DNA of 64,000 nucleotides from Macrostomum hystrix (lineage: Eukaryota > Animalia > Platyhelminthes). Made by a program: the position numbers and the translations under genes. Below are positions 37,221-62,300 of this stretch, piece by piece. Every line of letters begins with the position of its first letter. The stretch's first letter is position 1. Below the pieces are notes generated by a model that saw only the letters and a program-made list of their open reading frames with translations, made no database searches and was not told the origin of the DNA. Location of the stretch: positions 13,206,001-13,270,000 of the forward strand of contig CATNEN010000038.1 in the NCBI GenBank assembly GCA_950097015.1. The letters are read 5' to 3'.

Positions 37221-37385
37221 TGTCTCCATTACACGGCAGGCTCTTGTAAGGGCCTGTCGTGTAATGGATGTTATCCACCCACCCCCTTTTCTCTCGCTGC
37301 CTTCTCACCCACCCCTTGTGGGGGGGTTGGGGTTTTATATACCCGCGTGCCGTGCTTTGACTCGCGTGTCGCATCGGCTCAATTT
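37221..37385. other. 165-bp non-satellite GC-rich insert with a long hairpin; probable mobile-element remnant
   Basis: No similarity to the satellite or to the LTR element. Left flank ends ...ttttgatgca; right flank resumes at agagcttaacgcg (~323 bp of monomer missing, no TSD). Hairpin at 37225-37268, two CACCCACCCC copies, TATATA at 37336-37341. Confidence 0.85.
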
Positions 37386-42703: not shown

Positions 42704-42707
42704 AGAG
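42704..42707. repeat. Left target-site duplication AGAG
   Basis: Satellite aatt-AGAG-cacc is split as aattAGAG|TG...CA|AGAGcacc. Confidence 0.95.
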
Positions 42708-43752
42708 TGAAGAGTTTTGCGTGTTGATCAGACACACGAAACTCCCACTTCTAGACAATGGGGAACAATTGCCTAGGAATTTATAACAGTCACGTGACAC
42801 TTACTGCAATTGCTTCTTCTTCCTTAAGTAGTTCGTAGTCTTCTGGGTCCTTGAAATCCGGTAGTTCTTCTTCTTCTTATTCTGGTCGACCGTGAGGTTT
42901 CGAGTCTGTGTTTCTTGAGTCTTGGTAGTCTTGTCTTCTTTTGTCTTCCTGGCAGCTGCTTGAGTTTGTCTGTTGGCCAATAAATGACGAGAGCGAATCA
43001 GATTACTTTTCGGTTTCCTCGAGCTCGGAATTCACAATAGAAACGTGCGCCCTAGTGAACAATTGAAATCTCTCTTGTATATCTCTAGTAGGTCCTCCTG
43101 AAGGGCGTCTTCTTCGTTACCTCCGAAAGATAACGGATAACTCAAATCAAATCAATCAATAATCCTCTAGGAATATATCCTAGGAAACAAGGAGGCCTTT
43201 CTCAAATGTATCGACGATATGTGGCTCTCGTAAACTTAGTTCAATTCAACAACGATTGCTAGCAATAAATAACTCTGTCTAATAAAGCGCTTACCACTTG
43301 TATTTCCCTCAGAGATGAGTCCTCTTCTTCGTAAGGTGTTTTGAAGTCCGGTGGACCGCTCCGAGTCTGAATTTTTAGCTCGGATTTTCGCTTGTATTTA
43401 TAGTAAAATTTTGGGGAAAACCGGTTCTACTACCGGGTGTTTACATTGGGCATACATGTTTGCACAGTGAGGTCAGACTTGTTTGATCAGCTGCGTTTTG
43501 GGGGGTTTTCAGGTGAACATTACCATATTTGGAATATTGTGTAAATACAGGTGCAGAAACCGATGAGTCATGTTTGCTTCAAGTAAATACAGCTGTCGAG
43601 AACCAGTTCTCCGATTTCATGTCACATGACTTGTTTCTAAAAATAGCGCATGACTCATTCCTAAAAATAGATTAAACATTATAGCTAAGGTTTCCTTGTG
43701 ACATTACTTTAAGTAGCGCGTTAAGTAAAAACGTATTTTACAACTCTCTACA
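42708..43752 (-). repeat. 3' LTR (1045 bp)
   Basis: tgaagagttttgc...caactctctaca; no differences from 46630-47674 found by eye; adjacent to the PPT. Confidence 0.97.
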
Positions 43753-43755
43753 ATA

Positions 43756-43767
43756 TCTCCCTTTTTT
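43756..43767 (-). other. Polypurine tract
   Basis: - strand reads AAAAAAGGGAGA-TAT-TGTAGAG, immediately 5' of the 3' LTR. Confidence 0.88.
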
Positions 43768-44025
43768 ACGAAAAATTCGTCCCGAATTTATTGTTGACAA
43801 TTAAAATTTTGGCATAAAATTTTAGGAGAATATGCTTATATGTACGTATTTGTTGAAACAGTTGTGTGGTAGAATTTTATAGATTTACAAAAACATAGTG
43901 AAACAGTGGATAATTCGATTTAAAACTTGTACCTAAAGCGTGAGAGTGAATACCAGCACCGAGCAGTAGCAATAGTTACCAGCTACGAACGTATTAGTTA
44001 GTGGTAATTGTAGACAAAATTGTAA

Positions 44026-46095
44026 TTAAGAGGCAATAGTGAATGTAAGTAGAAGAAAAGTGTTTGGATTTTTGTTCACCCATAGATCATGTTGTTTAGG
44101 TGTGTTTGGTGTTGTCGGTTTATTGGTGTTTATTGAGTATCGTTGGTCTTCTGTCTCTCCAATTGGTGGAGTAAGGCGCATAGAAAAGTGCCATGGGTTG
44201 TTGCATCCTGATGGTCTGGTTTGTTGGTTATACCAGGTTGGTTGTTTCATATTGAATGTTAATGGTGTATTGAGAGTTTGCAGTACGGTACTTGTAGTAT
44301 CCGTTCTCATGTCGATCCACGTTGTTGGTTCATCATAGATATGATCATCATCATTTTCCATCGACGTATTGTAGTCACTTTTAGTCTGAGAAGATCTATC
44401 GTGCTTCGAGTAGTATGATTCGGTATTCACTGCTTTATCGTGTCCATTCTGTCCTTCAGATGAATTGACATGGGTTATGTTTTCGTATTCGGGATCAGGT
44501 TTGTACTTGGGTGTCGAAGGCGGTGTCTCTGTCAAGTCGATGTCATCGACGAAAATTTGTAGCATGCTGATGTTTTCTTCAGACGTGTTGTGTGAATTTT
44601 TCGCACTGTGGTCCTCATTATTCCTTTCTGTGGATGTGGACAATTCATCTATGCCTTCTTTGTTTTGCAGAATTTTTGAAAGATCACTCATCGTTGGAAT
44701 TTTGAATAATCCTTTGATTTGTTGTTGTACTTGTTTTCGTTCAATGTGTTGACAGGTGTTGAAGGCAACACTTTCTCTTGGCGAGGGAATCGATAATTCT
44801 TCAAACAATGAACCCATTATGCAGCTGCTGTCGTTGCTTGTGTTGTCGTTCTGTATTTCCTGTGTTGACTCATTGTTGTAGTAAAAATTGTTTTCTTCTG
44901 TATCCTCTGTTTCCTTTTGTGGCATGGGCGGCTCTTTCGAATGGTCGCTTTCGATTATAGTAATATAGGCTGCACCATCGTTGTCCAGATGAAGGTCATT
45001 GATTTCTTGCTCCTTCTTTTGTTTCTCAAGTTCATCAAGAACATTGACGGAAAAGTCTGGCATAAGATCTTCAATCTTGAACTTTGGTTCAATAGTTTGA
45101 GTGTATTCAGGCTCAATAGCTTGAGTGTATTGTCGACGGACTTGCGTTGGTTGTCTTGGAGGTGGAGGATTTCTTTGTTGACGATAAGGTACGATGGCAT
45201 TAGATGGTCTACTATCTTGTTGTCGACTATTTGTCCAATTACGGTTTGAAGGCTGTCTTGGAGGACGAGTCCAATTGGTCTGTCTATTGTCATTGTATGA
45301 ACGTGGGTTGCCACGTGATCTGCAGTCTCTAGCATAATGACCGATCCTTCCACAGGTGTAACAAGTTGATGTGTGCAAGTATCTCTGTTGTGGTTGTGGA
45401 TAGGAATATCTCTGCTGTTGTGGTACAATAGCAGAAGTTTGGTGTTGCTGCATGAGTTTGCTTAATTGTTCTGCTAGTTGTGTCGTGTCACTATTATGAG
45501 TAGTCATAAGAGGTGCGCTAGCTTCCCATTGCATTCCACAACGGAGCAATTGTTCCTCTGTGTTAATAGTTTCTCTCAGCAGTCTATCTCGCAAAGTAGG
45601 CTGTGCGTTGTTAATCACATGAAGTATTAAACTTTGTTCCCGGTCTTCAAGACGTTGTCTTTCTCGTGCAGCTGATTCGGCAGGTCCTATAGGTTGCGCT
45701 CCTTGATCCAATGGTGGAGGCTGATGTAATGCTTTAATGATCTTACGGATGTCATCAACAAAGGTGAGAAAACTCTCAGTGGGACTCATTTTTCGATTAT
45801 GAAGTTTATGAAGGAGTACCGATCTGTTTGTTCCACACCGTGCGAATTGTGCTCTCAGTTGGGTAACTAGAGCTTGATAATCTTGTTGTACTGCAGCTGT
45901 CAATTTTCCATAGATTTCTCGAGCTGTTCCTTGTAACAGTGGAGGTAGGAGGAGTGCTTTCTCTGCATTCTGTAATCCATATTCGCGTGAGACCAAATCA
46001 AAGTGATCAATGAATGTGTTGAAATCTTTATCCATTGTATACATTCCGACCGTTTCCTTAATGTCACGATGGACCTGATAGTTTCTTCGTGCCAT
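44026..46095 (-). CDS. gag: Gag-like protein, 689 aa from the first ATG (MARRNYQ...): capsid-like domain, CCHC zinc knuckle, R/Q/N-rich region, long acidic disordered C-terminal extension
   Basis: Uninterrupted ORF (the track starts it at TTG 46143; first ATG is at 46095). The N-terminal pattern F..F...F...K...L...L.G.A...Y..L...L...F and LHNRKMSPTESFLTFVDDI resemble Ty3/Gypsy capsid. CYTCGRIGHYARDC knuckle present. No D[ST]G protease or YxDD RT motif. Confidence 0.92.
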   Translation of the reverse strand: MARRNYQVHRDIKETVGMYTMDKDFNTFIDHFDLVSREYGLQNAEKALLLPPLLQGTAREIYGKLTAAVQQDYQALVTQLRAQFARCGTNRSVLLHKLHNRKMSPTESFLTFVDDIRKIIKALHQPPPLDQGAQPIGPAESAARERQRLEDREQSLILHVINNAQPTLRDRLLRETINTEEQLLRCGMQWEASAPLMTTHNSDTTQLAEQLSKLMQQHQTSAIVPQQQRYSYPQPQQRYLHTSTCYTCGRIGHYARDCRSRGNPRSYNDNRQTNWTRPPRQPSNRNWTNSRQQDSRPSNAIVPYRQQRNPPPPRQPTQVRRQYTQAIEPEYTQTIEPKFKIEDLMPDFSVNVLDELEKQKKEQEINDLHLDNDGAAYITIIESDHSKEPPMPQKETEDTEENNFYYNNESTQEIQNDNTSNDSSCIMGSLFEELSIPSPRESVAFNTCQHIERKQVQQQIKGLFKIPTMSDLSKILQNKEGIDELSTSTERNNEDHSAKNSHNTSEENISMLQIFVDDIDLTETPPSTPKYKPDPEYENITHVNSSEGQNGHDKAVNTESYYSKHDRSSQTKSDYNTSMENDDDHIYDEPTTWIDMRTDTTSTVLQTLNTPLTFNMKQPTWYNQQTRPSGCNNPWHFSMRLTPPIGETEDQRYSINTNKPTTPNTPKQHDLWVNKNPNTFLLLTFTIAS
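45322..45363 (-). other. CX2CX4HX4C zinc knuckle (nucleocapsid)
   Basis: Encodes CYTCGRIGHYARDC; single copy, as in Gypsy/Copia rather than the multi-knuckle BEL/Pao Gag. Confidence 0.95.
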
Positions 46096-46103
46096 ATTCG
46101 CAA

Positions 46104-46119
46104 CTGGGAACGGAAATAA
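46104..46119 (-). promoter_or_regulatory. Candidate 3' splice acceptor 8 nt upstream of the gag ATG
   Basis: - strand TTATTTCCGTTCCCAG|TTGCGAAT-ATG: pyrimidine tract plus CAG. Confidence 0.45.
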
Positions 46120-46191
46120 TTCAAGTTCTGGATCGATGTTCAAGGGTTCGTCCAGATTGACTTCTCTGACAAGATTTAGTGTGAATAAAAA

Positions 46192-46217
46192 GTGTGTGTG
46201 TGTGCGTGTGCGTGTGT
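46192..46217. repeat. Imperfect (GT)n microsatellite in the element 5' leader
   Basis: gtgtgtgtgtgtgcgtgtgcgtgtgt. Confidence 0.8.
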
Positions 46218-46609
46218 ATCAGCAAATTGAAAATGGTTTACACAGAGGAATTATTTACTCAGGACAAGGGAGAAAAATTTATACAAAGCAGGGAACGTAT
46301 GCCGCTTTTAACGCTGAAAAGGGGTTATTGAAATGTGAGCCGGTGAGTTCAGTCGCGCGATTCCCAGATGTGCAAACAATAGAGCGAAGTGACGCGTGTG
46401 GCTTATGTGCAAACAATATCCGGTAGGGACAGCAAAATTTTTTTCAGAGGTATGACGCAACAAAATTTTTATGAAACGGTGGATTATTTTAAATCAAAAG
46501 CAAAATTAATAAGTTGCAAAAATTTTTTTTTTTCTTTTTATGTTAAAACAATTCGAAAGTGGTACCGCAAAAAAATGTTTTTGTATCTCGGCCTGGGCTT
46601 GATTGCAGG

Positions 46610-46627
46610 GCCTGGGCGAGATCACCA
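46610..46627 (-). other. Primer-binding site (tRNA identity uncertain, possibly Trp)
   Basis: - strand: LTR end CA, 2-nt spacer AC, then TGGTGATCTCGCCCAGGC. TGG is complementary to tRNA CCA. Confidence 0.8.
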
Positions 46628-47285
46628 GTTGAAGAGTTTTGCGTGTTGATCAGACACACGAAACTCCCACTTCTAGACAATGGGGAACAATTGCCTAGGA
46701 ATTTATAACAGTCACGTGACACTTACTGCAATTGCTTCTTCTTCCTTAAGTAGTTCGTAGTCTTCTGGGTCCTTGAAATCCGGTAGTTCTTCTTCTTCTT
46801 ATTCTGGTCGACCGTGAGGTTTCGAGTCTGTGTTTCTTGAGTCTTGGTAGTCTTGTCTTCTTTTGTCTTCCTGGCAGCTGCTTGAGTTTGTCTGTTGGCC
46901 AATAAATGACGAGAGCGAATCAGATTACTTTTCGGTTTCCTCGAGCTCGGAATTCACAATAGAAACGTGCGCCCTAGTGAACAATTGAAATCTCTCTTGT
47001 ATATCTCTAGTAGGTCCTCCTGAAGGGCGTCTTCTTCGTTACCTCCGAAAGATAACGGATAACTCAAATCAAATCAATCAATAATCCTCTAGGAATATAT
47101 CCTAGGAAACAAGGAGGCCTTTCTCAAATGTATCGACGATATGTGGCTCTCGTAAACTTAGTTCAATTCAACAACGATTGCTAGCAATAAATAACTCTGT
47201 CTAATAAAGCGCTTACCACTTGTATTTCCCTCAGAGATGAGTCCTCTTCTTCGTAAGGTGTTTTGAAGTCCGGTGGACCGCTCCG

Positions 47286-47324
47286 AGTCTGAATTTTTAG
47301 CTCGGATTTTCGCTTGTATTTATA
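47286..47324 (-). promoter_or_regulatory. Candidate LTR core promoter: TATAAATA box and Inr-like TCAGAC
   Basis: - strand TATAAATA at 47324-47317 and TCAGAC at 47292-47287 (A about 34 nt from the first T); downstream of a motif-dense U3. Confidence 0.6.
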
Positions 47325-47359
47325 GTAAAATTTTGGGGAAAACCGGTTCTACTACCGGG

Positions 47360-47592
47360 TGTTTACATTGGGCATACATGTTTGCACAGTGAGGTCAGAC
47401 TTGTTTGATCAGCTGCGTTTTGGGGGGTTTTCAGGTGAACATTACCATATTTGGAATATTGTGTAAATACAGGTGCAGAAACCGATGAGTCATGTTTGCT
47501 TCAAGTAAATACAGCTGTCGAGAACCAGTTCTCCGATTTCATGTCACATGACTTGTTTCTAAAAATAGCGCATGACTCATTCCTAAAAATAG
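47360..47592. promoter_or_regulatory. Candidate U3 enhancer: 2x MEF2-type, 2x AP-1, 3x forkhead, 5x E-box motifs
   Basis: CTAAAAATAG 47559-68 and 47583-92; TGACTCA 47573-79; TGAGTCA 47486-92; GTAAATA 47463-69 and 47505-11; TGTTTAC 47360-66; CAGCTG 47410-15 and 47512-17; CAGGTG 47432-37 and 47470-75; GTCACATGAC 47543-52. Confidence 0.55.
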
Positions 47593-47674
47593 ATTAAACA
47601 TTATAGCTAAGGTTTCCTTGTGACATTACTTTAAGTAGCGCGTTAAGTAAAAACGTATTTTACAACTCTCTACA

Positions 47675-47678
47675 AGAG
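47675..47678. repeat. Right target-site duplication AGAG
   Basis: ...ctctaCA|AGAG|caccttgctc resumes the satellite in register. Confidence 0.95.
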
Positions 47679-50600
47679 CACCTTGCTCACGTGCTTGAAG
47701 AGCTTAACGCGTGCTGCTGGCACACATCACGTCAAACTCATATTTCAGGTATATTGCTAATGTTTGAATATAAGGCTCTAGCTCGTTTTCTCGATTCAAA
47801 ATATCGTTGACACTACCCCTGTCAGCAGATCTAGCGAAAGCTTGTTGCTGGCGATGTGAACACGCTATAACTAGCTGCTCTCGCGGATAGCGTAGGGCTG
47901 CTAAAGCAGTACAGAAATAACTTTTGCAGCTTTAGCTAGCCTGTTTGACTATAAAGTGTTTTGATGCACGCCTATTCATGAACAAGTGCAAATGAACATG
48001 TGCTAGCACACATCGCGTCATACTCATATTTTAGGTATATTGCTAATATTCTAGCCATCAAGTTTGTTTTCCTGATTAAAAAGTGCGTTAAAACACACCC
48101 CTGTAGGCAGATGCATCTGAAGCTTGTTGCTTGCTCTGTGAACACGATATGGCTAGCTGCACTCGTGGATCGCATTAGGCTGCGATAGCAGCACTAAATT
48201 ACATTTGCAGCTCTAGCTAGCCTGCTTGACAGTGACAAGCGGGTTGATTCAAGTGTAAAGAACAATTAGAGCACCTTGCTCACGTGCTTAAAGAGCTTAA
48301 CGCGTGCTGCTGGCACACATCACGTCAAACTCATATTTCAGGTATATTGCTAATATTTGAATATAAGGTTCTAGCTCGTTTTCTCGATTCAAAATATCGT
48401 TGACACTACCCCTGTCAGCAGATCTAGCGAAAGCTTGTTGCAGGCGATGTGAACACGCTATAACTAGCTGCTCTCGATGATAGCGTTGGGCTGCTAAAGA
48501 AGTACAGAAAAACTTTTGCAGCTTTAGCTAGCCTGTTTGACTATAAAGTGTTTTGATGCACGCCTATTCATGAACAAGTGTAAATGAACATGTGCTAGCA
48601 CACATCGCGTCATACTCATATTTTAGGTATATTGCTAATATTCTAGACATCAAGTTTGTTTTCCTGATTAAAAAGTGCGTTAAAACACACCCCTGTAGGC
48701 AGATGCATCTGAAGCTTGTTGCTTGCTCTGTGAACACGATATGGCTAGCTGCACTCGTGGATCGCATTAGGCTGCGATAGCAGCACTAAATTACATTTGC
48801 AGCTCTAGCTAGCCTGCTTGACAGTGACAAGCGGGTTGATTCAAGTGTAAAGAACAATTAGAGCACCTTGCTCACGTGCTTGAAGAGCTTAACGCGTGCT
48901 GCTGGCACACATCACGTCAAACTCATATTTCAGGTATATTGCTAATATTTGAATATAAGGTTCTAGCTCGTTTTCTCGATTCAAAATATCGTTGACACTA
49001 CCCCTGTCAGCAGATCTAGCGAAAGCTTGTTGCAGGCGATGTGAACACGCTATAACTAGCTGCTCTCGATGATAGCGTTGGGCTGCTAAAGAAGTACAGA
49101 AAAACTTTTGCAGCTTTAGCTAGCCTGTTTGACTATAAAGTGTTTTGATGCACGCCTATTCATGAACAAGTGTAAATAAACATGTGCTAGCACACATCGC
49201 GTCATACTCATATTTTAGGTATATTGCTAATATTCTAGAGATTTAAAGTTTGTTTTCCTGATTAAAAAGTGCGTTAAAACACACCCCTGTAGGCAGATGC
49301 ATCTGAAGCTTGTTGCTTGCTCTGTGAACACGATATGGCTAGCTGCACTCGTGGATCGCATTAGGCTGCGATAGCAGCACTAAATTACATTTGCAGCTCT
49401 AGCTAGCCTGCTTGACAGTGACAAGCGGGTTGATTCAAGTGTAAAGAACAATTAGAGCACCTTGCTCACGTGCTTGAAGAGCTTAACGCGTGCTGCTGGC
49501 ACACATCACGTCAAACTCATATTTCAGGTATATTGCTAATATTTGAATATAAGGCTCTAGCTCGTTTTCTCGATTCAAAATATCGTTGACACTACCCCTG
49601 TCAGCAGATCTAGCGAAAGCTTGTTGCTGGCGATGTGAACACGCTATAACTAGCTGCTCTCGCGGATAGCGTTGGGCTGCTAAAGCAGTCCAGAAATAAC
49701 TTTTGCAGCTTTAGCTAGCCTGTTTGACTATAAAGTGTTTTGATGCACGCCTATTCATGAACAAGTGTAAATGAACATGTGCTAGCACACATCGCGTCAT
49801 ACTCATATTTTAGGTATATTGCTAATATTCTAGACATCAAGTTTGTTTTCCTGATTAAAAAGTGCGTTAAAACACACCCCTGTAGGCAGATGCATCTGAA
49901 GCTTGTTGCTTGCTCTGTGAACACGATATGGCTAGCTGCACTCGTGGATCGCATTAGGCTGCGATAGCAGCACTAAATTACATTTGCAGCTCTAGCTAGC
50001 CTGCTTGACAGTGACAAGCGGGTTGATTCAAGTGTAAAGAACAATTAGAGCACCTTGCTCACGTGCTTGAAGAGCTTAACGCGTGCTGCTGGCACACATC
50101 ACGTCAAACTCATATTTCAGGTATATTGCTAATATTTGAATATAAGGTTCTAGCTCGTTTTCTCGATTCAAAATATCGTTGACACTACCCCTGTCAGCAG
50201 ATCTAGCGAAAGCTTGTTGCAGGCGATGTGAACACGCTATAACTAGCTGCTCTCGATGATAGCGTTGGGCTGCTAAAGAAGTACAGAAAAACTTTTGCAG
50301 CTTTAGCTAGCCTGTTTGACTATAAAGTGTTTTGATGCACGCCTATTCATGAACAAGTGTAAATAAACATGTGCTAGCACACATCGCGTCATACTCATAT
50401 TTTTGGTATATTGCTAATATTCTAGAGATTTAAAGTTTGTTTTCCTGATTAAAAAGTGCGTTAAAACACACCCCTGTAGGCAGATGCATCTGAAGCTTGT
50501 TGCTTGCTCTGTGAACACGATATGGCTAGCTGCACTCGTGGATCGCATTAGGCTGCGATAGCAGCACTAAATTACATTTGCAGCTTTAGCTAGCCTGCTT

Positions 50601-53600
50601 GACAGTGACAAGCGGGTTGATTCAAGTGTAAAGAACAATTAGAGCACCTTGCTCACGTGCTTGAAGAGCTTAACGCGTGCTGCTGGCACACATCACGTCA
50701 AACTCATATTGCAGGTATATTGCTAATATTTGAATATAAGGCTCTAGCTCGTTTTCTCGATTCAAAATATCGTTGACACTACCCCTGTCAGCAGATCTAG
50801 CGAAAGCTTGTTGCTGGCGATGTGAACACGCTATAACTAGCTGCTCTCGCGGATAGCGTTGGGCTGCTAAAGCAGTCCAGAAATAACTTTTGCAGCTTTA
50901 GCTAGCCTGTTTGACTATAAAGTGTTTTGATGCACGCCTATTCATGAACAAGTGTAAATGAACACGTGCTGGCACACATCGCGTCATACTCATATTTTAG
51001 GTATATTGCTAATATTCTAGAGATCAAGTTTGTTTTCCTGATTAAAAAGTGCGTTAAAACACACCCCTGTAGGCAGATGCATCTGAAGCTTGTTGCTTGC
51101 TCTGTGAACACGATATGGCTAGCTGCACTCGTGGATCGCATTAGGCTGCGATAGCAGCACTAAATTACATTTGCAGCTCTAGCTAGCCTGCTTGACAGTG
51201 ACAAGCGGGTTGATTCAAGTGTAAAGAACAATTAGAGCACCTTGCTCACGTGCTTGAAGAGCTTAACGCGTGCTGCTGGCACACATCACGTCAAACTCAT
51301 ATTTCAGGTATATTGCTAATATTTGAATATAAGGTTCTAGCTCGTTTTCTCGATTCAAAATATCGTTGACACTACCCCTGTCAGCAGATCTAGCGAAAGC
51401 TTGTTGCAGGCGATGTGAACACGCTATAACTAGCTGCTCTCGATGATAGCGTTGGGCTGCTAAAGAAGTACAGAAAAACTTTTGCAGCTTTAGCTAGCCT
51501 GTTTGACTATAAAGTGTTTTGATGCACGCCTATTCATGAACAAGTGTAAATAAACATGTGCTAGCACACATCGCGTCATACTCATATTTTTGGTATATTG
51601 CTAATATTCTAGAGATTTAAAGTTTGTTTTCCTGATTAAAAAGTGCGTTAAAACACACCCCTGTAGGCAGATGCATCTGAAGCTTGTTGCTTGCTCTGTG
51701 AACACGATATGGCTAGCTGCACTCGTGGATCGCATTAGGCTGCGATAGCAGCACTAAATTACATTTGCAGCTCTAGCTAGCCTGCTTGACAGTGACAAGC
51801 GGGTTGATTCAAATGTAAAGAACAATTAGAGCACCTTGCTCACGTGCTTGAAGAGCTTAACGCGTGCTGCTGGCACACATCACGTCAACCTCATATTTCA
51901 GGTATATTGCTAATATTCTGAATATAAGGTTCTAGCTCGTTTTCTCGATTGAAAAGATCGTTGACAATTCCCCTGTCAGCAGATCTAGCGAAAGCTTGTT
52001 GCTGGCGATGTGAACACGCTATAACTAGCTGCTCTCGCGGATAGCGTAGGGCTGCTAAAGCAGTACAGAAATAACTTTTGCAGCTTTAGCTAGCCTGTTT
52101 GACTATAAAGTGTTTTGATGCACGCCTATTCATGAACAAGTGTAAATGAACATGTGCTAGCACACATCGCGTCATACTCATATTTTTGGTATATTGCTAA
52201 TATTCTAGACATCAAGTTTGTTTTCCTGATTAAAAAGTGCGTTAAAACACACCCCTGTAGGCAGATGCATCTGAAGCTTGTTGCTTGCTCTGTGAACACG
52301 ATATGGCTAGCTGCACTCGTGGATCGCATTAGGCTGCGATAGCAGCACTAAATTACATTTGCAGCTCTAGCTAGCCTGCTTGACAGTGACAAGCGGGTTG
52401 ATTCAAGTGTAAAGAACAATTAGAGCACCTTGCTCACGTGCTTGAAGAGCTTAACGCGTGCTGCTGGCACACATCACGTCAAACTCATATTTCAGGTATA
52501 TTGCTAATGTTTGAATATAAGGCTCTAGCTCGTTTTCTCGATTCAAAATATCGTTGACACTACCCCTGTCAGCAGATCTAGCGAAAGCTTGTTGCTGGCG
52601 ATGTGAACACGCTATAACTAGCTGCTCTCGCGGATAGCGTAGGGCTGCTAAAGCAGTACAGAAATAACTTTTGCAGCTTTAGCTAGCCTGTTTGACTATA
52701 AAGTGTTTTGATGCACGCCTATTCATGAACAAGTGCAAATGAACATGTGCTAGCACACATCGCGTCATACTCATATTTTAGGTATATTGCTAATATTCTA
52801 GCCATCAAGTTTGTTTTCCTGATTAAAAAGTGCGTTAAAACACACCCCTGTAGGCAGATGCATCTGAAGCTTGTTGCTTGCTCTGTGAACACGATATGGC
52901 TAGCTGCACTCGTGGATCGCATTAGGCTGCGATAGCAGCACTAAATTACATTTGCAGCTCTAGCTAGCCTGCTTGACAGTGACAAGCGGGTTGATTCAAG
53001 TGTAAAGAACAATTAGAGCACCTTGCTCACGTGCTTGAAGAGCTTAACGCGTGCTGCTGGCACACATCACGTCAAACTCATATTTCAGGTATATTGCTAA
53101 TATTTGAATATAAGGTTCTAGCTCGTTTTCTCGATTCAAAATATCGTTGACACTACCCCTGTCAGCAGATCTAGCGAAAGCTTGTTGCAGGCGATGTGAA
53201 CACGCTATAACTAGCTGCTCTCGATGATAGCGTTGGGCTGCTAAAGAAGTACAGAAAAACTTTTGCAGCTTTAGCTAGCCTGTTTGACTATAAAGTGTTT
53301 TGATGCACGCCTATTCATGAACAAGTGTAAATAAACATGTGCTAGCACACATCGCGTCATACTCATATTTTAGGTATATTGCTAATATTCTAGAGATTTA
53401 AAGTTTGTTTTCCTGATTAAAAAGTGCGTTAAAACACACCCCTGTAGGCAGATGCATCTGAAGCTTGTTGCTTGCTCTGTGAACACGATATGGCTAGCTG
53501 CACTCGTGGATCGCATTAGGCTGCGATAGCAGCACTAAATTACATTTGCAGCTCTAGCTAGCCTGCTTGACAGTGACAAGCGGGTTGATTCAAGTGTAAA

Positions 53601-56310
53601 GAACAATTAGAGCACCTTGCTCACGTGCTTGAAGAGCTTAACGCGTGCTGCTGGCACACATCACGTCAAACTCATATTTCAGGTATATTGCTAATATTTG
53701 AATATAAGGCTCTAGCTCGTTTTCTCGATTCAAAATATCGTTGACACTACCCCTGTCAGCAGATCTAGCGAAAGCTTGTTGCTGGCGATGTGAACACGCT
53801 ATAACTAGCTGCTCTCGCGGATAGCGTTGGGCTGCTAAAGCAGTCCAGAAATAACTTTTGCAGCTTTAGCTAGCCTGTTTGACTATAAAGTGTTTTGATG
53901 CACGCCTATTCATGAACAAGTGTAAATGAACACGTGCTGGCACACATCGCGTCATACTCATATTTTAGGTATATTGCTAATATTCTAGAGATCAAGTTTG
54001 TTTTCCTGATTAAAAAGTGCGTTAAAACACACCCCTGTAGGCAGATGCATCTGAAGCTTGTTGCTTGCTCTGTGAACACGATATGGCTAGCTGCACTCGT
54101 GGATCGCATTAGGCTGCGATAGCAGCACTAAATTACATTTGCAGCTCTAGCTAGCCTGCTTGACAGTGACAAGCGGGTTGATTCAAGTGTAAAGAACAAT
54201 TAGAGCACCTTGCTCACGTGCTTGAAGAGCTTAACGCGTGCTGCTGGCACACATCACGTCAAACTCATATTTCAGGTATATTGCTAATATTTGAATATAA
54301 GGTTCTAGCTCGTTTTCTCGATTCAAAATATCGTTGACACTACCCCTGTCAGCAGATCTAGCGAAAGCTTGTTGCAGGCGATGTGAACACGCTATAACTA
54401 GCTGCTCTCGATGATAGCGTTGGGCTGCTAAAGAAGTACAGAAAAACTTTTGCAGCTTTAGCTAGCCTGTTTGACTATAAAGTGTTTTGATGCACGCCTA
54501 TTCATGAACAAGTGTAAATAAACATGTGCTAGCACACATCGCGTCATACTCATATTTTTGGTATATTGCTAATATTCTAGAGATTTAAAGTTTGTTTTCC
54601 TGATTAAAAAGTGCGTTAAAACACACCCCTGTAGGCAGATGCATCTGAAGCTTGTTGCTTGCTCTGTGAACACGATATGGCTAGCTGCACTCGTGGATCG
54701 CATTAGGCTGCGATAGCAGCACTAAATTACATTTGCAGCTCTAGCTAGCCTGCTTGACAGTGACAAGCGGGTTGATTCAAATGTAAAGAACAATTAGAGC
54801 ACCTTGCTCACGTGCTTAAAGAGCTTAACGCGTGCTGCTGGCACACATCACGTCAACCTCATATTTCAGGTATATTGCTAATATTCTGAATATAAGGTTC
54901 TAGCTCGTTTTCTCGATTGAAAAGATCGTTGACAATTCCCCTGTCAGCAGATCTAGCGAAAGCTTGTTGCTGGCGATGTGAACACGCTATAACTAGCTGC
55001 TCTCGCGGATAGCGTAGGGCTGCTAAAGCAGTACAGAAATAACTTTTGCAGCTTTAGCTAGCCTGTTTGACTATAAAGTGTTTTGATGCACGCCTATTCA
55101 TGAACAAGTGTAAATGAACATGTGCTAGCACACATCGCGTCATACTCATATTTTAGGTATATTGCTAATATTCTAGACATCAAGTTTGTTTTCCTGATTA
55201 AAAAGTGCGTTAAAACACACCCCTGTAGGCAGATGCATCTGAAGCTTGTTGCTTGCTCTGTGAACACGATATGGCTAGCTGCACTCGTGGATCGCATTAG
55301 GCTGCGATAGCAGCACTAAATTACATTTGCAGCTCTAGCTAGCCTGCTTGACAGTGACAAGCGGGTTGATTCAAATGTAAAGAACAATTAGAGCACCTTG
55401 CTCACGTGCTTGAAGAGCTTAACGCGTGCTGCTGGCACACATCACGTCAAACTCATATTTGAGGTATATTGCTAAAATTCTAAATATAGGGTTCTAGCTC
55501 GTTTTCTCGATTCATAATATCGTTCACAATTCCCCTGTCAGCAGATCTAGCGAAAGCTTGTTGCTGGCGATGTGAACACGCTATAACTAGCTGCTCTCGA
55601 TGATAGCGTTGGGCTGCTAAAGAAGTACAGAAAAACTTTTGCAGCTTTAGCTAGCCTGTTTGACTATAAAGTGTTTTGATGCACGCCTATTCATGAACAA
55701 GTGTAAATGAACATGTGCTGGCACACATCGCGTCATACTCATATTTTAGGTATATTGCTAATATTCTAGAGATCAAGTTTGTTTTCCTGATTAAAAAGTG
55801 CGTTAAAACACACCCCTGTAGGCAGATGCATCTGAAGCTTGTTGCTTGCTCTGTGAACACGATATGGCTAGCTGCACTCGTGGATCGCATTAGGCTGCGA
55901 TAGCAGCACTAAATTACATTTGCAGCTCTAGCTAGCCTGCTTGACAGTGACAAGCGGGTTGATTCAAATGTAAAGAACAATTAGAGCACCTTGCTCACGT
56001 GCTTGAAGAGCTTAACGCGTGCTGCTGGCACACATCACGTCAAACTCATATTTCAGGTATATTGCTAAAATTCTAAATATAGGGTTCTAGCTCGTTTTCT
56101 CGATTCATAATATCGTTCACAATTCCCCTGTCAGCAGATCTAGCGAAAGCTTGTTGCTGGCGATGTGAACACGCTATAACTAGCTGCTCTCGCGGATAGC
56201 GTAGGGCTGCTAAAGAAGTACACAAAAACTTTTGCAGCTTTAGCTAGCCTGTTTGACTATAAAGTGTTTTGATGCACGCCTATTCATGAACAAGTGTAAA
56301 TGAACATGTG

Positions 56311-56596
56311 CTGGCACACATCGCGTCATACTCATATTTCAGGTATATTGCTAATATTTGAATATAAGGTTCTAGCTCGTTTTCTCGATTAAAGTGATCG
56401 TTGAAAATTCCCCTGTCAGCAGATCTAGCGAAAGCTTGTTGATGGCGATGTGAACACGCTATAACTAGCTGCTCTCGCGGATAGCGTAGGGCTGCTAAAG
56501 CAGTACAGAAATAACTTTTGCAGCTTTAGCTAGCCTGTTTGACTATAAAGTGTTTTGATGCACGCCTATTCATGAACAAGTGTAAATGAACATGTG
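56311..56596 (+). repeat. Hybrid half-monomer (~286 bp; A-to-B crossover within CTCATATTT, 56331-56339)
   Basis: A-type acatcgcgtcatactcatattt continues as B-type caggtatattgctaatatttgaatataagg. Anchor spacing 55715 to 57189 = 2x594 + 286. Confidence 0.9.
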
Positions 56597-59352
56597 CTGG
56601 CACACATCGCGTCATACTCATATTTTAGGTATATTGCTAATATTCTAGAGATTTAAAGTTTGTTTTCCTGATTAAAAAGTGCGTTAAAACACACCCCTGT
56701 AGGCAGATGCATCTGAAGCTTGTTGCTTGCTCTGTGAACACGATATGGCTAGCTGCACTCGTGGATCGCATTATTCTGCGATAGCAGCACTAAATTACAT
56801 TTGCAGCTCTAGCTAGCCTGCTTGACAGTGACAAGCGGGTTGATTCAAATGTAAGGAACAATTAGAGCACCTTGCTCACGTGCTTGAAGAGCTTAACGCG
56901 TGCTGCTGGCACACATCACGTCAAACTCATATTTGAGGTATATTGCTAAAATTCTAAATATAGGGTTCCAGCTCGTTTTCTCGATTCATAATATCGTTCA
57001 CAATTCCCCTGTCAGCAGATCTAGCGAAAGCTTGTTGCTGGCGATGTGAACACGCTATAACTAGCTGCTCTCGCGGATAGCGTTGGGCTGCTAAAGAAGT
57101 ACAGAAAAACTTTTGCAGCTTTAGCTAGCCTGTTTGACTATAAAGTGATTTGATGCACGCCTATTCATGAACAAGTGTAGATGAACATGTGCTGGCACAC
57201 ATCGCGTCATACTCATATTTTAGGTATATTGTTAATATTCTAGAGATCAAGTTTGTTTTCCTGATTAAAAAGTGCGTTAAAACACACCCCTGTAGGCAGA
57301 TGCATCTGAAGCTTGTTGCTTGCTCTGTGAGCACGATATGGCTAGTTGCACTCGTGGATCGCATTAGGCTGCGATAGCAGCACTAAATTACATTTGCAGC
57401 TCTAGCTAGCCTGCTTGACAGTGACAAGCGGGTTGATTCAAGTGTAAAGAACAATTAGAGCACCTTGCTCACGTGCTTGAAGAGCTTAACGCGTGCTGCT
57501 GGCACACATCACGTCAAACTCATATTTCAGGTATATTGCTAATATTTGAATATAAGGTTCTAGCTCGTTTTCTCGATTGAACAGATCGTTGACAATCCCC
57601 CTGTCAGCAGATCTAGCGAAAGCTTGTTGCTGGCGATGCGAACACGCTATAACTAGCTGCTCTCGCGGATAGCGTTGGGCTGCTAAAGAAGTACAGAAAT
57701 AACTTTTGCAGCTTTTGCTAGCCTGTTTACTATAAAAAGTGTTTTGATGCACGCCTATTCATGAACAAGTGTAAATGAACATGTGCTGGCACACATCGCG
57801 TCATACTCATATTTTAGGTATATTGCTAATATTCTAGAGATCAAGTATGTTTTCCTGATTTAAAAGTGCGTTAAAACACACCCCTGTAGGCAGATGCATC
57901 TGAAGCTTGTTGCTTGCTCTGTGAACACGATATGGCTAGCTGCACTCGTGGATCGCATTAGGCTGCGATAGCAGCACTAAATTACATTTGCAGCTCTAGC
58001 TAGCCTGCTTGACAGTGACAAGCGGGTTGATTCAAGTGTAAAGAACAATTAGAGCACCTTGCTCACGTGCTTGAAGAGCTTAACGCGTGCTGCTGGCACA
58101 CATCACGTCAACCTCATATTTCAGGTATATTGCTAATATTCCGAATATAAGGTTCTAGCTCGTTTTCTCGATTCAAAATATCGTTCCCAATTCCCTGTCA
58201 GCAGATCTAGCGAAAGCGTGTTGCTGGCGATGTGAACACGCTATGACTAGCTGCTCTCGCGGATAGCGTAGGGCTGCTAAAGCAGTACAGAAATAACTTT
58301 TGCAGCTTTAGCTAGCCTGTTTGACTATAAAGTGTTTTGATGCACGCCTATTCATGAACAAGTGTAAATGAACATGTGCTGGCACACATCGCGTCATACT
58401 CATATTTTAGGTATATTGCTAATGTTCTAGAGATTTAAAGTTTGTTTTCCTGATTAAAAAGTGCGTTTAAACACACCTCTGTAGGCAGATGCATCTGAAG
58501 CTTGTTGCTTGCTCTGTGAACACGATATGGCTAGCTGCACTCGTGGATCGCATTGGGCTGCGATAGCAGCACTAAATTACATTTGCAGCTCTAGCTAGCC
58601 TGCTTGACAGTGACAAGCGGGTTGATTCAAGTGTAAAGAACAATTAGAGCACCTTGCTCACGTGCTTGAAGAGCTTAACGCGTGCTGCTGGCACACATCA
58701 AGTCCACCTCATATTTCAGGTATATTGCTAATATTTGAATATAAGGTTCTAGCTCGTTTTCTCGATTGAAAAGATCGTTGACAATCCCCCTGTCAGCAGA
58801 TCTAGCGAAAGCTTGTTGCTGGCGATGCGAACACGCTATAACTAGCTGCTCTCGCGGATAGCGTTGGGCTGCTAAAGAAGTACAGAAAAACTTTTGCAGC
58901 TTTAGCTAGCCTGTTTGACTATAAAGTGTTTTGATGCACGCCTATTCATGAACAAGTGTAAATGAACATGTGCTGGCACACATCGCGTCATACTCATATT
59001 TTAGGTATATTGCTAATATTCTAGAGATCAAGTATGTTTTCCTGATTAAAAAGTGCGTTAAAACACACCCCTGTAGGCAGATGCATCTGAAGCTTGTTGC
59101 TTGCTCTGTGAACACGATATGGCTAGCTGCACTCGTGGATCGCGTTGGGCTGCGATAGCAGCACTAAATTACATTTGCAGCTCTAGCTAGCCTGCTTGAC
59201 AGTGACAAGCGGGTTGATTCAAGTGTAAAGAAGAATATTCTAGAGATCAAGTTTGTTTTCCTGATTAAAAAGTGCGTTATAACACACCCCTGTAGGCAGA
59301 TGCATCTGAAGCTTGTTGCTTGCTCTGTGAACACGATATGGCTAGCTGCACT

Positions 59353-62300
59353 CGTGTTCACATCGCCAGTAACATGCTTTCGCTAGATCTGCTGACAGGG
59401 GAATTGTCAACGATCTCTTCAATCGAGAAAACCAGCTAGAACCTTATATTCAGAATATTAGCAATATTCCTGAAATATGAGGTGGACGTGATGTGTGCCA
59501 GCAGCACGCGTTAAGCTCTTCAAGCACGTGAGCAAGGTGCTCTAATTGTTCTTTACACTTGAATCAACCCGCTTGTCACTGTCAAGCAGGCTAGCTAGAG
59601 CTGCAAATGTAATTTAGTGCTGCTATCGCAGCCCAACGCGATCGACGAGTGCAGCTAGCCATATCGTGTTCACAGAGCAAGCAACAAGCTTCAGATGCAT
59701 CTGCCTACAGGGGTGTGTTTTAACGCACTTTTAAATCAGGAAAACATACTTGATCTCTAGAATATTAGCAATATACCTAAAATATGAGAAAGACGCGATG
59801 TGTGCCAGCACATGTTCATTTACACTTGTTCATGAATAGGCGTGCATCAAAACACTTTATAGTCAAACAGGCTAGCTAAAGCTGCAAAAGTTATTTCTGT
59901 ACTGCTTTTGCTTTAGCAGCCCAACGCTATCCGCGAGAGCAGCTAGTTATAGCGTGTTTACATCGCCAGCAACACGCTTTCGCTAGATCTGCTACCAGCG
60001 GAATTTTGAACGATATTATGAATCGAGAAAACGACCTAGAACCCTATATTTCGAATATTGCCAATATTCCTGAAATATGAGGTGTACGTGATGTGTGCCA
60101 GCAGCACGCGTTAAGCTCTTCAAGCACGTGAGCAAGGTGCTCTAATTGTTCTTTACACTTGAATCAACCCGCTTGTCACTGTCAAGCAGGCTAGCTAGAG
60201 CTGCAAATGTAATTTAGTGCTGCTATCGCAGCCCAACGCGATCCACGAGTGCAGCTAGCCATATCGTGTTCACAGAGCAAGCAACAAGCTTCAGATGCAT
60301 CTGCCTACAGGGGTGTGTTTTAACGCACTTTTTAATCAGGAAAACATACTTGATTTCTAGAATATTAGCAATATACCTAAAACATGAGTATGACGCGATG
60401 TGTGCCAGCACATGTTCATTTACACTTGTTCATGAATAGGCGTGCATCAAAACACTTTATAGTCAAACAGGCTAGCTAAAGCTGCAAAAGTTATTTCTGT
60501 ACTGCTTTAGCAGCCCTACGCTATCCGCGAGAGCAGCTAGTCATAGCGTGTTCACATCGCCAGCAACACGCTTTCGCTAGATCTGCTGACAGGGGAATTG
60601 TGAACGATATTCTGAATCGAGAAAACGGGCTAGAACCATATATTTAGAATTTTAGCAATATACCTGAAATATGAGTTTGACGTGATGTGTGCCAGCAGCA
60701 CGCGTTAAGCTCTTCAAGCACGTGAGCAAGGTGCTCTAATTGTTCTTTACACTTGAATCAACCCGCTTGTCACTGTCAAGCAGGCTAGCTAGAGCTGCAA
60801 ATGTAATTTAGTGCTGCTATCGCAGCCCAACGCGATCCACGAGTGCAGCTAGCCATATCGTGTTCACAGAGCAAGCAACAAGCTTCAGATGCATCTGCCT
60901 ACAGGGGTGTGTTTTAACGCACTTTTAAATCAGGAAAACATACTTGATCTCTAGAATATTAGCAATATACCTAAAATATGAGAAAGACGCGATGTGTGCC
61001 AGCACATGTTCATTTACACTTGTTCATGAATAGGCGTGCATCAAAACACTTTATAGTCAAACAGGCTAGCTAAAGCTGCAAAAGTTTTTCTGTACTTCTT
61101 TAGCAGCCCAACGCTATCCGCGAGAGCAGCTAGTTATGGCGTGTTTACATCGCCAGCAACACGCTTTCGCTAGATCTGCTGACAGGGGAATTTTGAACGA
61201 TATTATGAATCGAGAAACCGACCTAGAACCATATATTTCGAATATTGCCAATATTCCTGAAATATGAGGTGGACGTGATGTGTGCCAGCAGCACGCGTTA
61301 AGCTCTTCAAGCACGTGAGCAAGGTGCTCTAATTGTTCTTTACACTTGAATCAACCCGCTTGTCACTGTCAAGCAGGCTAGCTAGAGCTGCAAATGTAAT
61401 TTAGTGCTGCTATCGCAGCCCAACGCGATCCACGAGTGCAGCTAGCCATATCGTGTTCACAGAGCAAGCAACAAGCTTCAGATGCATCTGCCTACAGGGG
61501 TGTGTTTTAACGCACTTTTAAATCAGGAAAACATACTTGATCTCTAGAATATTAGCAATATACCTAAAATATGAGAAAGACGCGATGTGTGCCAGCACAT
61601 GTTCATTTACACTTGTTCATGAATAGGCGTGCATCAAAACACTTTATAGTCAAACAGGCTAGCTAAAGCTGCAAAAGTTTTTCTGTACTTCTTTAGCAGC
61701 CCAACGCTATCCGCGAGAGCAGCTAGTTATGGCGTGTTTACATCGCCAGCAACACGCTTTCGCTAGATCTGCTGACAGGGGAATTTTGAACGATATTATG
61801 AATCGAGAAACCGACCTAGAACCATATATTTCGAATATTGCCAATATTCCTGAAATATGAGGTGGACGTGATGTGTGCCAGCAGCACGCGTTAAGCTCTT
61901 CAAGCACGTGAGCAAGGTGCTCTAATTGTTCTTTACACTTGAATCAACCCGCTTGTCACTGTCAAGCAGGCTAGCTAGAGCTGCAAATGTAATTTAGTGC
62001 TGCTATCGCAGCCCAACGCGATCCACGAGTGCAGCTAGCCATATCGTGTTCACAGAGCAAGCAACAAGCTTCAGATGCATCTGCCTACAGGGGTGTGTTT
62101 TAACGCACTTTTAAATCAGGAAAACATACTTGATCTCTAGAATAGTAGCAATATACCTAAAATATGAGAAAGACGCGATGTGTGCCAGCACATGTTCATT
62201 TACACTTGTTCATGAATAGGCGTGCATCAAAACACTTTATAGTCAAACAGGCTAGCTAAAGCTGCAAAAGTTTTTCTGTACTTCTTTAGCAGCCCAACGC

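What the first reader, a model, noticed from the sequence alone, without database searches (positions are those of the whole stretch)
42708..47674. Freshly inserted gag-only LTR retroelement with an intact, oversized Gag inside a satellite array
Seen: two 1045-bp LTRs with no visible mismatch, a perfect 4-bp TSD, PBS, PPT, and one uninterrupted 689-codon ORF filling most of the 2877-bp internal region; no protease, RT, RNase H or integrase. Known: LTRs are identical at integration, and TG...CA ends plus a TSD require an integrase; gag-only non-autonomous elements (TR-GAG) are described mainly in plants. Inference: this copy was recently reverse-transcribed and integrated using a helper's Pol in trans, while keeping its own capsid gene. 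That would be a two-component or 'satellite' retroelement system, probably in an animal. The ~400-aa open extension and clean 3' UTR look more like a stable family than a fresh deletion derivative.
Basis: partly seen in the sequence, partly recalled or inferred. Interest (0 to 1): 0.85.

Follow-up and report, generated by a model that had tools for sequence, protein, structure and literature searches.

The report
Young gag-only LTR retroelement copy
A real, very recently inserted LTR retroelement that keeps only its capsid (gag) gene sits in a satellite array, but its closest relatives are flatworm retrovirus-like elements with gag, an envelope-like gene and pol, so it is best read as a stripped-down dependent copy of that known kind, not a new kind of system.

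Summary
Window 42708-47674 is a 4,967-bp LTR element on the minus strand. It has two identical 1,045-bp TG..CA LTRs, a 4-bp duplication (AGAG), a primer-binding site, a polypurine tract and one intact 689-codon ORF, with no room for pol. Removing it restores the 593-bp satellite unit without a gap.

Residues 1-320 are a Ty3/mdg4-type Gag: a capsid fold plus one CCHC knuckle. The only close relatives are P0001 and P0002 (51-59% identity). More distant ones are Macrostomum lignano polyproteins. These carry Gag, a variable linker, a membrane-glycoprotein-like domain, then protease-RT-RNase H-integrase. This is the GAG-ENV-POL order already published for flatworm "errantiviruses".

The "oversized" tail (aa 361-689) is acidic and looks disordered. 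It lies where relatives have the Gag-Env linker, a stretch that must stay open in a polyprotein. An open tail is therefore no evidence for a stable gag-only family.

The copy must have used reverse transcriptase and integrase made elsewhere. I could not test whether it belongs to a propagating gag-only lineage or is a one-off deletion.

Interest is moderate to low: a new member of a known kind. The contig is not human.

The parts
42704..42707 (.). Target-site duplication, left copy (AGAG on + strand)
   Evidence: AGAG flanks both ends. The rebuilt empty site aligns without gaps to the satellite.
42708..43752 (-). 3' LTR in element sense, 1,045 bp, TG..CA ends
   Evidence: identical to 46630-47674 with 0 mismatches.
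43756..43767 (-). Polypurine tract (AAAAAAGGGAGA in element sense), 3 nt from the 3' LTR
   Evidence: Read directly from the sequence.
43768..44025 (-). 3' untranslated stretch between the gag stop codon and the PPT. It is T-rich and has stops in all frames.
   Evidence: No similarity to relatives' env or pol in any frame.
44026..46095 (-). gag ORF, 689 codons plus a TAA stop
   Evidence: The ATG start matches the start of relative P0001.
45496..46038 (-). Capsid (CA) domain, about aa 20-200, two all-helical lobes
   Evidence: AlphaFold2 model has mean pLDDT 83, above 90 over most of aa 10-200. The listed Foldseek PDB hits are all Arc, dArc1/2, HIV, SIV, RSV or HERV-K capsids, with the best E about 0.01. 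Homologues hit Pfam PNMA, Retrotrans_gag and Ty3_capsid.
45322..45363 (-). Single CCHC zinc knuckle (nucleocapsid), aa 245-258, followed by a basic P/Q/R-rich stretch to about aa 320
   Evidence: Pfam zf-CCHC, E 4e-7. Net charge is +6 per 40 aa over aa 241-320.
44029..45015 (-). C-terminal extension, aa 361-689. It is acidic, rich in T/N/S/E/D/P, low in hydrophobic residues, and ends in an 11-residue hydrophobic run.
   Evidence: Homology to P0002 runs to aa 423 and to P0001 to aa 356, with a weak patch at 536-589. It occupies the position of the Gag-Env linker of relatives.
46096..46609 (-). 5' leader between the PBS and the gag ATG. It contains a (GT)13 run at 46192-46217.
   Evidence: It is part of a 1,270-nt stretch free of ATG.
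46610..46627 (-). Primer-binding site, 18 nt starting TGG, 2 nt after the 5' LTR. On the + strand it reads like a tRNA 3' end finishing in CCA.
   Evidence: The partner tRNA was not identified: there is no tRNA gene in the window and no host tRNA set.
46630..47674 (-). 5' LTR in element sense. It has TATAAA at 47319-47324, and the part downstream of 47365 has no ATG.
47675..47678 (.). Target-site duplication, right copy (AGAG)

Best explanation
This is a non-autonomous, env- and pol-less copy of a Ty3/mdg4 (gypsy-type) retrovirus-like element. It belongs to the GAG-ENV-POL kind found in flatworms, and it integrated very recently into a 593-bp satellite array.

What it keeps:
- Everything that acts in cis: both LTRs with a TATA box, an ATG-free leader of about 1.2 kb, the PBS and the PPT.
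- A complete Gag (capsid plus one zinc knuckle).
- The acidic, probably disordered linker that in autonomous relatives joins Gag to an envelope-like membrane glycoprotein.

What it lacks: by comparison with the 2,852-aa M. lignano polyprotein, about 6.5 kb that would encode Env, protease, RT, RNase H and integrase.

How it works:
- Its RNA can be transcribed from the LTR, translated into Gag and packaged.
- Its DNA copy was made and inserted by reverse transcriptase and integrase from a full-length relative. This is inferred from identical LTRs, TG..CA ends and a 4-bp duplication in an element with no enzymes.
- The "oversized Gag" is Gag plus the inherited linker. Nothing here shows a new functional domain.

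My split of the step that cannot be seen here:
- about 45%: the deletion pre-dated this copy, meaning a deleted RNA was mobilised in trans at least once;
- about 40%: the deletion arose in this copy, by template switching during reverse transcription or after integration;
- about 10%: it is a retro-copy of a spliced sub-genomic RNA;
- about 5%: something else.
For: Shown directly:
- Identical 1,045-bp LTRs, a 4-bp duplication and a gapless rebuilt empty site.
- PBS and PPT are in the right places.
- Only 807 non-gag internal bases, and no pol or env similarity in any frame.
- The 1,270 nt upstream of the gag ATG hold no ATG. About 20.6 are expected and 0 of 5,000 shuffles reach zero. The 309 nt of U3 upstream hold 12. 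A TATA box sits at the boundary.

Gag identity:
- Pfam zf-CCHC, a confident model and capsid-only fold hits.
- Homologues match PNMA, Retrotrans_gag and Ty3_capsid.

Family context:
- Of 1.84 billion representatives, only P0001 and P0002 are close (E 1e-92 and 1e-70). M. lignano P0003 and P0004 come next (names).
- P0004 has Gag at 165-440, protease at 1626, then RT, RNase H and integrase to 2606. Its pol is Ty3-like. It exists as several 99.5-100% identical copies.
- P0001's tail (499-727) aligns to P0004 696-920 (E 1e-18) and its residues 455-568 align to P0002 2073-2179.
- Relatives have a hydrophobic signal or anchor after a basic patch. P0004 then has 16 Cys and 8 N-glycosylation sites, and P0002-P0004 have a second membrane anchor about 85-130 aa before protease.
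- P0002 gives a weak Pfam match to a class III viral fusion glycoprotein (E 1.3e-4, below the cut-off).
- Published: Ty3/gypsy errantiviruses of Platyhelminthes, Nematoda and Bryozoa carry gB-type ENV in the order GAG-ENV-POL (PMC13524379).

Tail:
- It is acidic with low hydrophobicity.
- It is homologous to P0002's linker up to aa 423.
- Base composition flips from A-rich and T-poor to T-rich about 45 nt before the stop. That fits either a deletion junction or the start of a signal peptide.
Against: - No full-length partner of this particular family was seen. The nearest pol-bearing relative shares only 31-59% Gag identity, so "deletion derivative" rests on family architecture and not on an aligned parent.
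- P0002-P0004 are annotators' gene models. P0002 and P0003 are visibly chimeric with host domains (beta-mannosidase-like, laminin). Their single-frame layout is not verified on DNA. Only P0001 is a plain ORF call.
- The Env-like domain's fold was not confirmed. The AlphaFold2 model had pLDDT about 25 there. A sequence search of solved structures found no fusogen.
- The window's linker (about 320 aa) is 100 aa or more longer than in the four relatives, and most of it aligns to nothing.
- Identical LTRs could also come from gene conversion or from assembly polishing.
Confidence: 0.7

Rival explanations
1. One reading: a stable two-component ("satellite") retroelement family. Gag-only elements with a functional, selected 330-aa extension are maintained over time and mobilised by a helper's Pol, as TR-GAG elements are in plants.
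For: - The copy has every cis element and an intact gag with a selected-looking ATG-free leader.
- It integrated recently without enzymes of its own.
- The deletion removes the env-like region and pol but spares all of Gag and the linker.
- TR-GAG elements have been shown to transpose in Arabidopsis next to an autonomous partner (PMC8704663).
Against: - The open tail is explained by descent from a polyprotein in which that stretch must be open.
- With 0 LTR differences there has been no time for decay, so an intact ORF is not evidence of selection.
- No second copy is in the window.
- Nothing closer than 51-59% identity was found among the proteins searched.
- The tail has no recognisable domain or late-domain motif.
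Confidence: 0.3
2. A one-off defective copy. A full-length GAG-ENV-POL RNA was packaged with its own Pol. The roughly 6.5-kb deletion arose by template switching during that reverse transcription, or by illegitimate recombination soon after integration. The copy is a dead end with no dependent lineage.
For: - Identical LTRs and a duplication are equally expected under this view.
- Composition switches abruptly about 45 nt before the stop, and the ORF ends a dozen codons later. That is what a random junction into T-rich 3' sequence would give.
- No other copy was seen anywhere.
Against: - The 5' breakpoint would have fallen by chance near a domain boundary, sparing the whole Gag and linker.
- The absence of other copies is uninformative, because the host genome is not in the collections searched.
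Confidence: 0.4
3. A retro-copy of a spliced sub-genomic RNA. The parent splices from the end of the gag-linker region to a site near its 3' end, and that RNA was packaged and reverse-transcribed.
For: - Related nematode Cer1 makes a spliced mRNA joining in-frame gag exons to a 3' ORF (PMC10309623).
- Env-carrying elements generally need sub-genomic RNAs (general knowledge of retroviruses).
- Most of the tail (aa 424-689) aligns to no relative's linker, so it could come from a 3' ORF.
Against: - No parent is available to show donor and acceptor sites.
- A weak patch (aa 536-589) resembles P0001's linker.
- Spliced RNAs usually lack packaging signals (general knowledge).
Confidence: 0.1
4. Not a mobile copy at all: a domesticated gag-derived host gene, or an assembly or polishing artefact that made the LTRs identical.
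For: Gag domestication is common (Arc and PNMA appear among the fold and family hits). Satellite arrays are hard to assemble.
Against: - Complete LTRs, PBS, PPT, a duplication and a gapless empty site inside a tandem array are the signature of an insertion, not of a host gene.
- The junctions are exact to the base.
Confidence: 0.03

Closest known systems
GAG-ENV-POL Ty3/gypsy "errantiviruses" of Platyhelminthes, Nematoda and Bryozoa (PMC13524379; bioRxiv 2023.10.26.564294)
   Same: The window's Gag is homologous to the Gag of flatworm proteins with this layout. That layout is Gag, then a signal/anchor, a Cys-rich ectodomain and a membrane anchor, then PR-RT-RH-IN. The pol of the relatives is Ty3-like.
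   Different: The window copy has no env and no pol. The gB-type fold of the relatives' middle domain was not confirmed here. I could not check whether the window's family is one of the 1,512 published elements, because no supplementary files were held.
Macrostomum lignano 2,852-aa polyprotein family (PAA86625.1 / Mlig009479, P0004) and P0001 / P0002
   Same: The capsid and zinc-knuckle Gag shows 31% (P0004), 51-56% (P0001) and 46-59% (P0002) identity. A conserved motif follows the nucleocapsid, and a variable linker follows that.
   Different: These proteins continue into an envelope-like domain, and P0002-P0004 continue into pol. The window's ORF stops at about the point where their signal or anchor begins. 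At this divergence they are a different family, probably from a different species.
TR-GAG elements of plants (terminal-repeat retrotransposons with a GAG domain; definition and transposition evidence in PMC8704663)
   Same: Two LTRs, PBS, PPT, a single ORF encoding Gag, no pol, and dependence on an autonomous relative.
   Different: TR-GAG are described as multi-copy plant families. All 15 papers found with the term are on plants. Here there is one copy, an animal host and an env-carrying parent type. Family status is untested.
Cer1 of Caenorhabditis elegans (PMC10309623)
   Same: It is a Ty3/gypsy relative with gag and pol in one frame and a large Gag region holding long disordered stretches. 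It is reported as sister to a flatworm gB-env element.
   Different: Cer1 is autonomous. Its extra protein CERV comes from a spliced mRNA. No sequence similarity to the window's tail was tested or seen.
Non-coding non-autonomous LTR elements (LARD, TRIM) and defective proviruses such as mouse ETn/MusD (from general knowledge, not tested here)
   Same: They keep the LTRs, PBS and PPT and borrow the enzymes of an autonomous partner.
   Different: Those elements have lost gag too. This copy keeps an intact gag.

Membership tests
LTR retrotransposon / provirus (structural definition) | Two direct long terminal repeats ending TG..CA | tested here: met
   1,045 bp each, 0 mismatches, TG..CA ends.
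LTR retrotransposon / provirus (structural definition) | Short target-site duplication made by integrase | tested here: met
   AGAG on both sides. The empty site rebuilds without gaps at 99.9%.
LTR retrotransposon / provirus (structural definition) | tRNA primer-binding site next to the 5' LTR and a polypurine tract next to the 3' LTR | tested here: inconclusive
   An 18-nt TGG... site lies 2 nt from the LTR and a 12-nt purine run lies 3 nt from the other LTR. The matching host tRNA could not be identified (no host tRNA set).
Ty3/mdg4 (gypsy, Metaviridae) superfamily | Pol with the order PR-RT-RNase H-IN and an RT that groups with Ty3/mdg4 | tested here: not met
   This copy has no pol at all, so it cannot be placed by the defining gene. 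Relatives found through Gag do have Ty3-like pol.
Ty3/mdg4 (gypsy, Metaviridae) superfamily | Gag with a two-lobed retroviral-type capsid and a CCHC nucleocapsid, homologous to Ty3/mdg4 Gag | tested here: met
GAG-ENV-POL flatworm errantivirus-like elements | An envelope (class III, gB-type) gene between gag and pol | tested here: not met
   It is absent from the window copy. In relatives, a signal/anchor plus Cys-rich ectodomain plus anchor is present, but the fold is unconfirmed. The window is therefore a derivative of this kind, not a full member.
TR-GAG-type non-autonomous elements | LTRs plus a single ORF encoding Gag, with no pol | tested here: met
TR-GAG-type non-autonomous elements | A family of several copies sharing the same gag-only structure, with an autonomous partner of matching LTRs | not testable with these tools

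The most novel reading that the evidence does not exclude
The copy belongs to an established gag-only lineage that parasitises an env-carrying GAG-ENV-POL endogenous retrovirus of a flatworm. Its expanded acidic tail would be selected, for example to compete for packaging or to interfere with the helper's Gag-Env polyprotein. That would be an animal counterpart of plant TR-GAG, riding on a retrovirus-like helper.
Probability: 0.2. Interest if true: 0.55.

Novelty: new member of a known kind. Interest (0 to 1): 0.33.

Why it matters
- The insertion marks recent, possibly ongoing retroelement activity in the host. It shows integrase-mediated insertion into a highly homogenised satellite array.
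- It points to a little-studied group: flatworm retrovirus-like elements in which Gag, an envelope-like glycoprotein and Pol appear to be read in one frame.
- If other copies with the same junction exist, this would be a tractable animal example of a Gag-encoding dependent retroelement and its helper.
- As a single copy it is an ordinary defective provirus.

Tried and rejected
No DNA of any relative could be fetched, so no LTR/PBS comparison, breakpoint mapping or dN/dS was possible.
- Three protein-database searches (whole Gag, aa 1-360, P0001 Env-like part) found only P0001.
- Two metagenome scans (a Gag pattern and an exact LTR-PBS 28-mer) and one viral-contig scan found nothing.
- An AlphaFold2 model of P0001 with a 5-sequence alignment was unusable for the Env-like part (pLDDT about 25), so no fold search was run on it.
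- phmmer of P0002 against solved structures gave no fusogen.
- Pfam gave nothing for the window tail or for P0001.
- Rfam and tRNA scans of the window were empty.
- No canonical heat-shock element of the kind reported in M. lignano LTRs is present.
- The bacterial promoter/terminator scan is irrelevant to a eukaryotic LTR and was ignored.
- The eLife paper's supplementary tables, which hold PBS types and flatworm elements, were not held.
- Rejected: that the tail is out-of-frame pol or env, and that the ORF is open by chance.
- The alignment tool printed an automatic consensus line for A1-A3. It was not used or saved.
- I do not take the contig for human.

Full report

Yes.

- The two repeats at 42708-43752 and 46630-47674 are 1,045 bp long and identical.
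- They are flanked by AGAG on both sides.
- I removed the element and one AGAG in silico. The resulting 800-bp stretch aligns without gaps at 99.9% to neighbouring satellite units. This is a clean integrase-type insertion.
- The rest of the window is the same 593-bp satellite, apart from 165 bp at 37221-37385. No other piece of the element occurs in it.
- The single long ORF is on the minus strand (46095..44026, 689 codons from ATG). The element therefore reads right to left.
- In that sense the LTRs begin TG and end CA.
- An 18-nt primer-binding site starting TGG lies 2 nt after the 5' LTR (46610-46627).
- A 12-nt purine tract lies 3 nt before the 3' LTR (43756-43767).
- Outside gag only 807 internal bases remain, and no other ORF exceeds 157 aa. 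There is physically no room for pol.

**2. What the ORF encodes**

- Pfam sees only a CCHC zinc knuckle at aa 244-259.
- An AlphaFold2 model of aa 1-300, built with 44 homologues, is confident (mean pLDDT 83) and all-helical over aa 3-222.
- Its listed matches among solved structures are all retroelement or retroviral capsids: Arc, dArc1/2, HIV, SIV, FIV, RSV and HERV-K. The best E-values are about 0.01, so this is modest but one-sided evidence.
- The homologues used for the model hit Pfam PNMA, Retrotrans_gag and Ty3_capsid.
- Residues 1-320 are therefore a Ty3/mdg4-type capsid-nucleocapsid Gag with a basic stretch after the knuckle.
- Residues 361-689 are acidic (net charge -4 to -9 per 40 residues over most of the stretch) and rich in T, N, S, E, D and P. 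They have low hydrophobicity and no late-domain motif or recognisable domain.
- The tail is open far beyond chance: 0 stops against about 19 expected, and 0 of 20,000 shuffles were stop-free.

**3.

- The 1,270 nt upstream of the gag ATG (46096-47365) contain no ATG at all. About 20.6 are expected, and 0 of 5,000 shuffles reach zero.
- The 309 nt of the LTR upstream of that stretch hold 12 ATGs.
- A TATAAA sits at 47319-47324, just inside the ATG-free part.
- This is what a scanned 5' leader under selection looks like. It supports the ATG at 46095 as the true start and places the transcription start soon after the TATA box.
- It speaks for the fitness of the lineage this copy came from, not for this copy's own history.

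**4. Relatives**

- A full HMMER pass over 1.84 billion representative proteins found only two close relatives. P0001 is a 727-aa plain ORF on a 2.9-kb Logan contig (51-56% identity). P0002 is a 3,074-aa gene model (46-59% identity).
- Next come the Macrostomum lignano proteins P0003 and P0004, at 31-33% identity (names).
- More distant hits are ordinary Gag or Gag-protease proteins of animals such as Mytilus.
- P0004 is 2,852 aa and is present as several 99.5-100% identical copies. It has Gag at 165-440, protease at 1626-1705, then RT, RNase H and integrase to 2606. Its pol is Ty3-like.
- Between Gag and protease lie about 1,200 residues. They begin with a hydrophobic signal or anchor after a basic patch, and a conserved Cys-containing motif follows.
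- In P0004 that region holds 16 Cys and 8 N-glycosylation sites. A second membrane anchor lies about 130 aa before protease. P0002 and P0003 show the same two anchors.
- P0001's C-terminal part (499-727) aligns to this region of P0004 (E 1e-18), and its residues 455-568 align to P0002 2073-2179.
- P0002 gives a weak, sub-threshold Pfam match to a class III viral fusion glycoprotein.
- This layout is published. Ty3/gypsy "errantiviruses" of Platyhelminthes, Nematoda and Bryozoa carry a herpesvirus-gB-type ENV, with ORFs in the order GAG-ENV-POL (PMC13524379).
- I could not confirm the fold myself.

**5. What this means for the "oversized Gag"**

- In all four relatives Gag is followed by a poorly conserved linker of 120-215 aa before the envelope-like domain.
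- The window's homology runs to aa 356 with P0001 and to aa 423 with P0002. The extension therefore starts as that linker.
- The ORF ends in a short hydrophobic run at about the place where relatives begin their signal or anchor.
- Base composition changes from A-rich and T-poor to T-rich about 45 nt before the stop.
- In an element translated as one polyprotein the linker must stay open for pol to be made. A copy with 0 LTR differences has had no time to decay.
- The open extension and intact gag are therefore inherited. They are not evidence for a stable gag-only family.
- The window's linker is about 100 aa longer than in the relatives, and most of it aligns to nothing. This remains unexplained.

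**6. Mechanism**

- Shown: a complete set of cis elements, an intact gag, no enzymes, and an integrase-type insertion.
- Inferred from established retroelement biology: reverse transcriptase and integrase came from a full-length relative.
- Age: with no difference in 1,045 bp, the 95% upper bound is roughly 0.14-1.4 million generations or years for mutation rates of 1e-8 to 1e-9. The host's rate is unknown.
- Not resolvable here: whether a deleted RNA was mobilised in trans (a dependent lineage), whether the deletion arose in this copy, or whether a spliced RNA was copied, as Cer1's spliced gag-containing mRNA suggests is possible.
- I lean slightly to the first. The deletion spares all of Gag, the linker, the leader and 258 nt before the PPT.

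**7. Limits**

- The host genome is absent from every collection searched.
- P0002-P0004 are gene models and may be spliced or chimeric. P0002 and P0003 carry host-like domains.
- The host is probably a flatworm related to Macrostomum, but this is inferred only from the nearest named homologues.
- The contig is not human.

**8. Comparison and verdict**

- Functionally the copy matches the definition of a TR-GAG element: LTRs plus a single Gag ORF. That class is known from plants, where transposition next to an autonomous partner has been shown. All papers found with the term are on plants.
- Phylogenetically it derives from the recently described GAG-ENV-POL flatworm elements.
- Defective proviruses are commonplace. 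I therefore rate it a new member of a known kind, with moderate to low interest.
- There is a roughly 20% chance that it belongs to a real dependent gag-only lineage, which would be more interesting.

Noticed in passing
window 1-42707 and 47675-64000: Apart from the element and the 165-bp insert listed separately, the window is one satellite with a 593-bp unit that has an internal half-period of about 282-312 bp. Full-length unit alignments near the element are 96-100% identical to the reference unit. The per-4-kb means of 81-90% also include weaker half-period alignments.
   Followed up: partly
window about 59353: The satellite array flips strand here, with head-to-head units. The AT skew changes sign in the last 4 kb.
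   Followed up: partly
window 37221-37385: A 165-bp insert, unique in the window, replaces part of one satellite unit. It contains a 44-nt imperfect hairpin and G/C-rich runs. Its origin is unknown.
   Followed up: partly
window 46096-47365 (minus strand): A 1,270-nt stretch upstream of the gag ATG has no ATG at all (about 20.6 expected), whereas the 309 nt of U3 hold 12. This is a strikingly clean scanned leader.
   Followed up: yes
proteins P0001, P0002, P0003, P0004 (relatives; no DNA held): Gag, an internal signal/anchor, a Cys-rich ectodomain, a second anchor and then protease-RT-RNase H-integrase appear in one reading frame. P0001 is a plain ORF across the Gag-to-glycoprotein join. A membrane glycoprotein embedded in a Gag-Pol polyprotein raises questions of topology and processing.
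   Followed up: partly
window about 44059-44082 (aa 666-673) versus P0004 aa about 685-692: The window's tail has PKQHDLWV. P0004 has PKQHPLYV just after its signal/anchor. The window has no anchor upstream of the motif. This may be chance or a trace of a rearranged boundary.
   Followed up: no
window 43625-43670 and 47547-47592; 46192-46217: A 24-bp tandem duplication (1.9 copies) lies in the U3 part of each LTR, and a (GT)13 microsatellite lies in the leader.
   Followed up: no
protein P0052 (MEE4246962.1): A 1,009-aa Gag homologue is annotated as a protein of a Kangiellaceae bacterium metagenome-assembled genome. It is probably eukaryotic DNA binned into a bacterial MAG.
   Followed up: no
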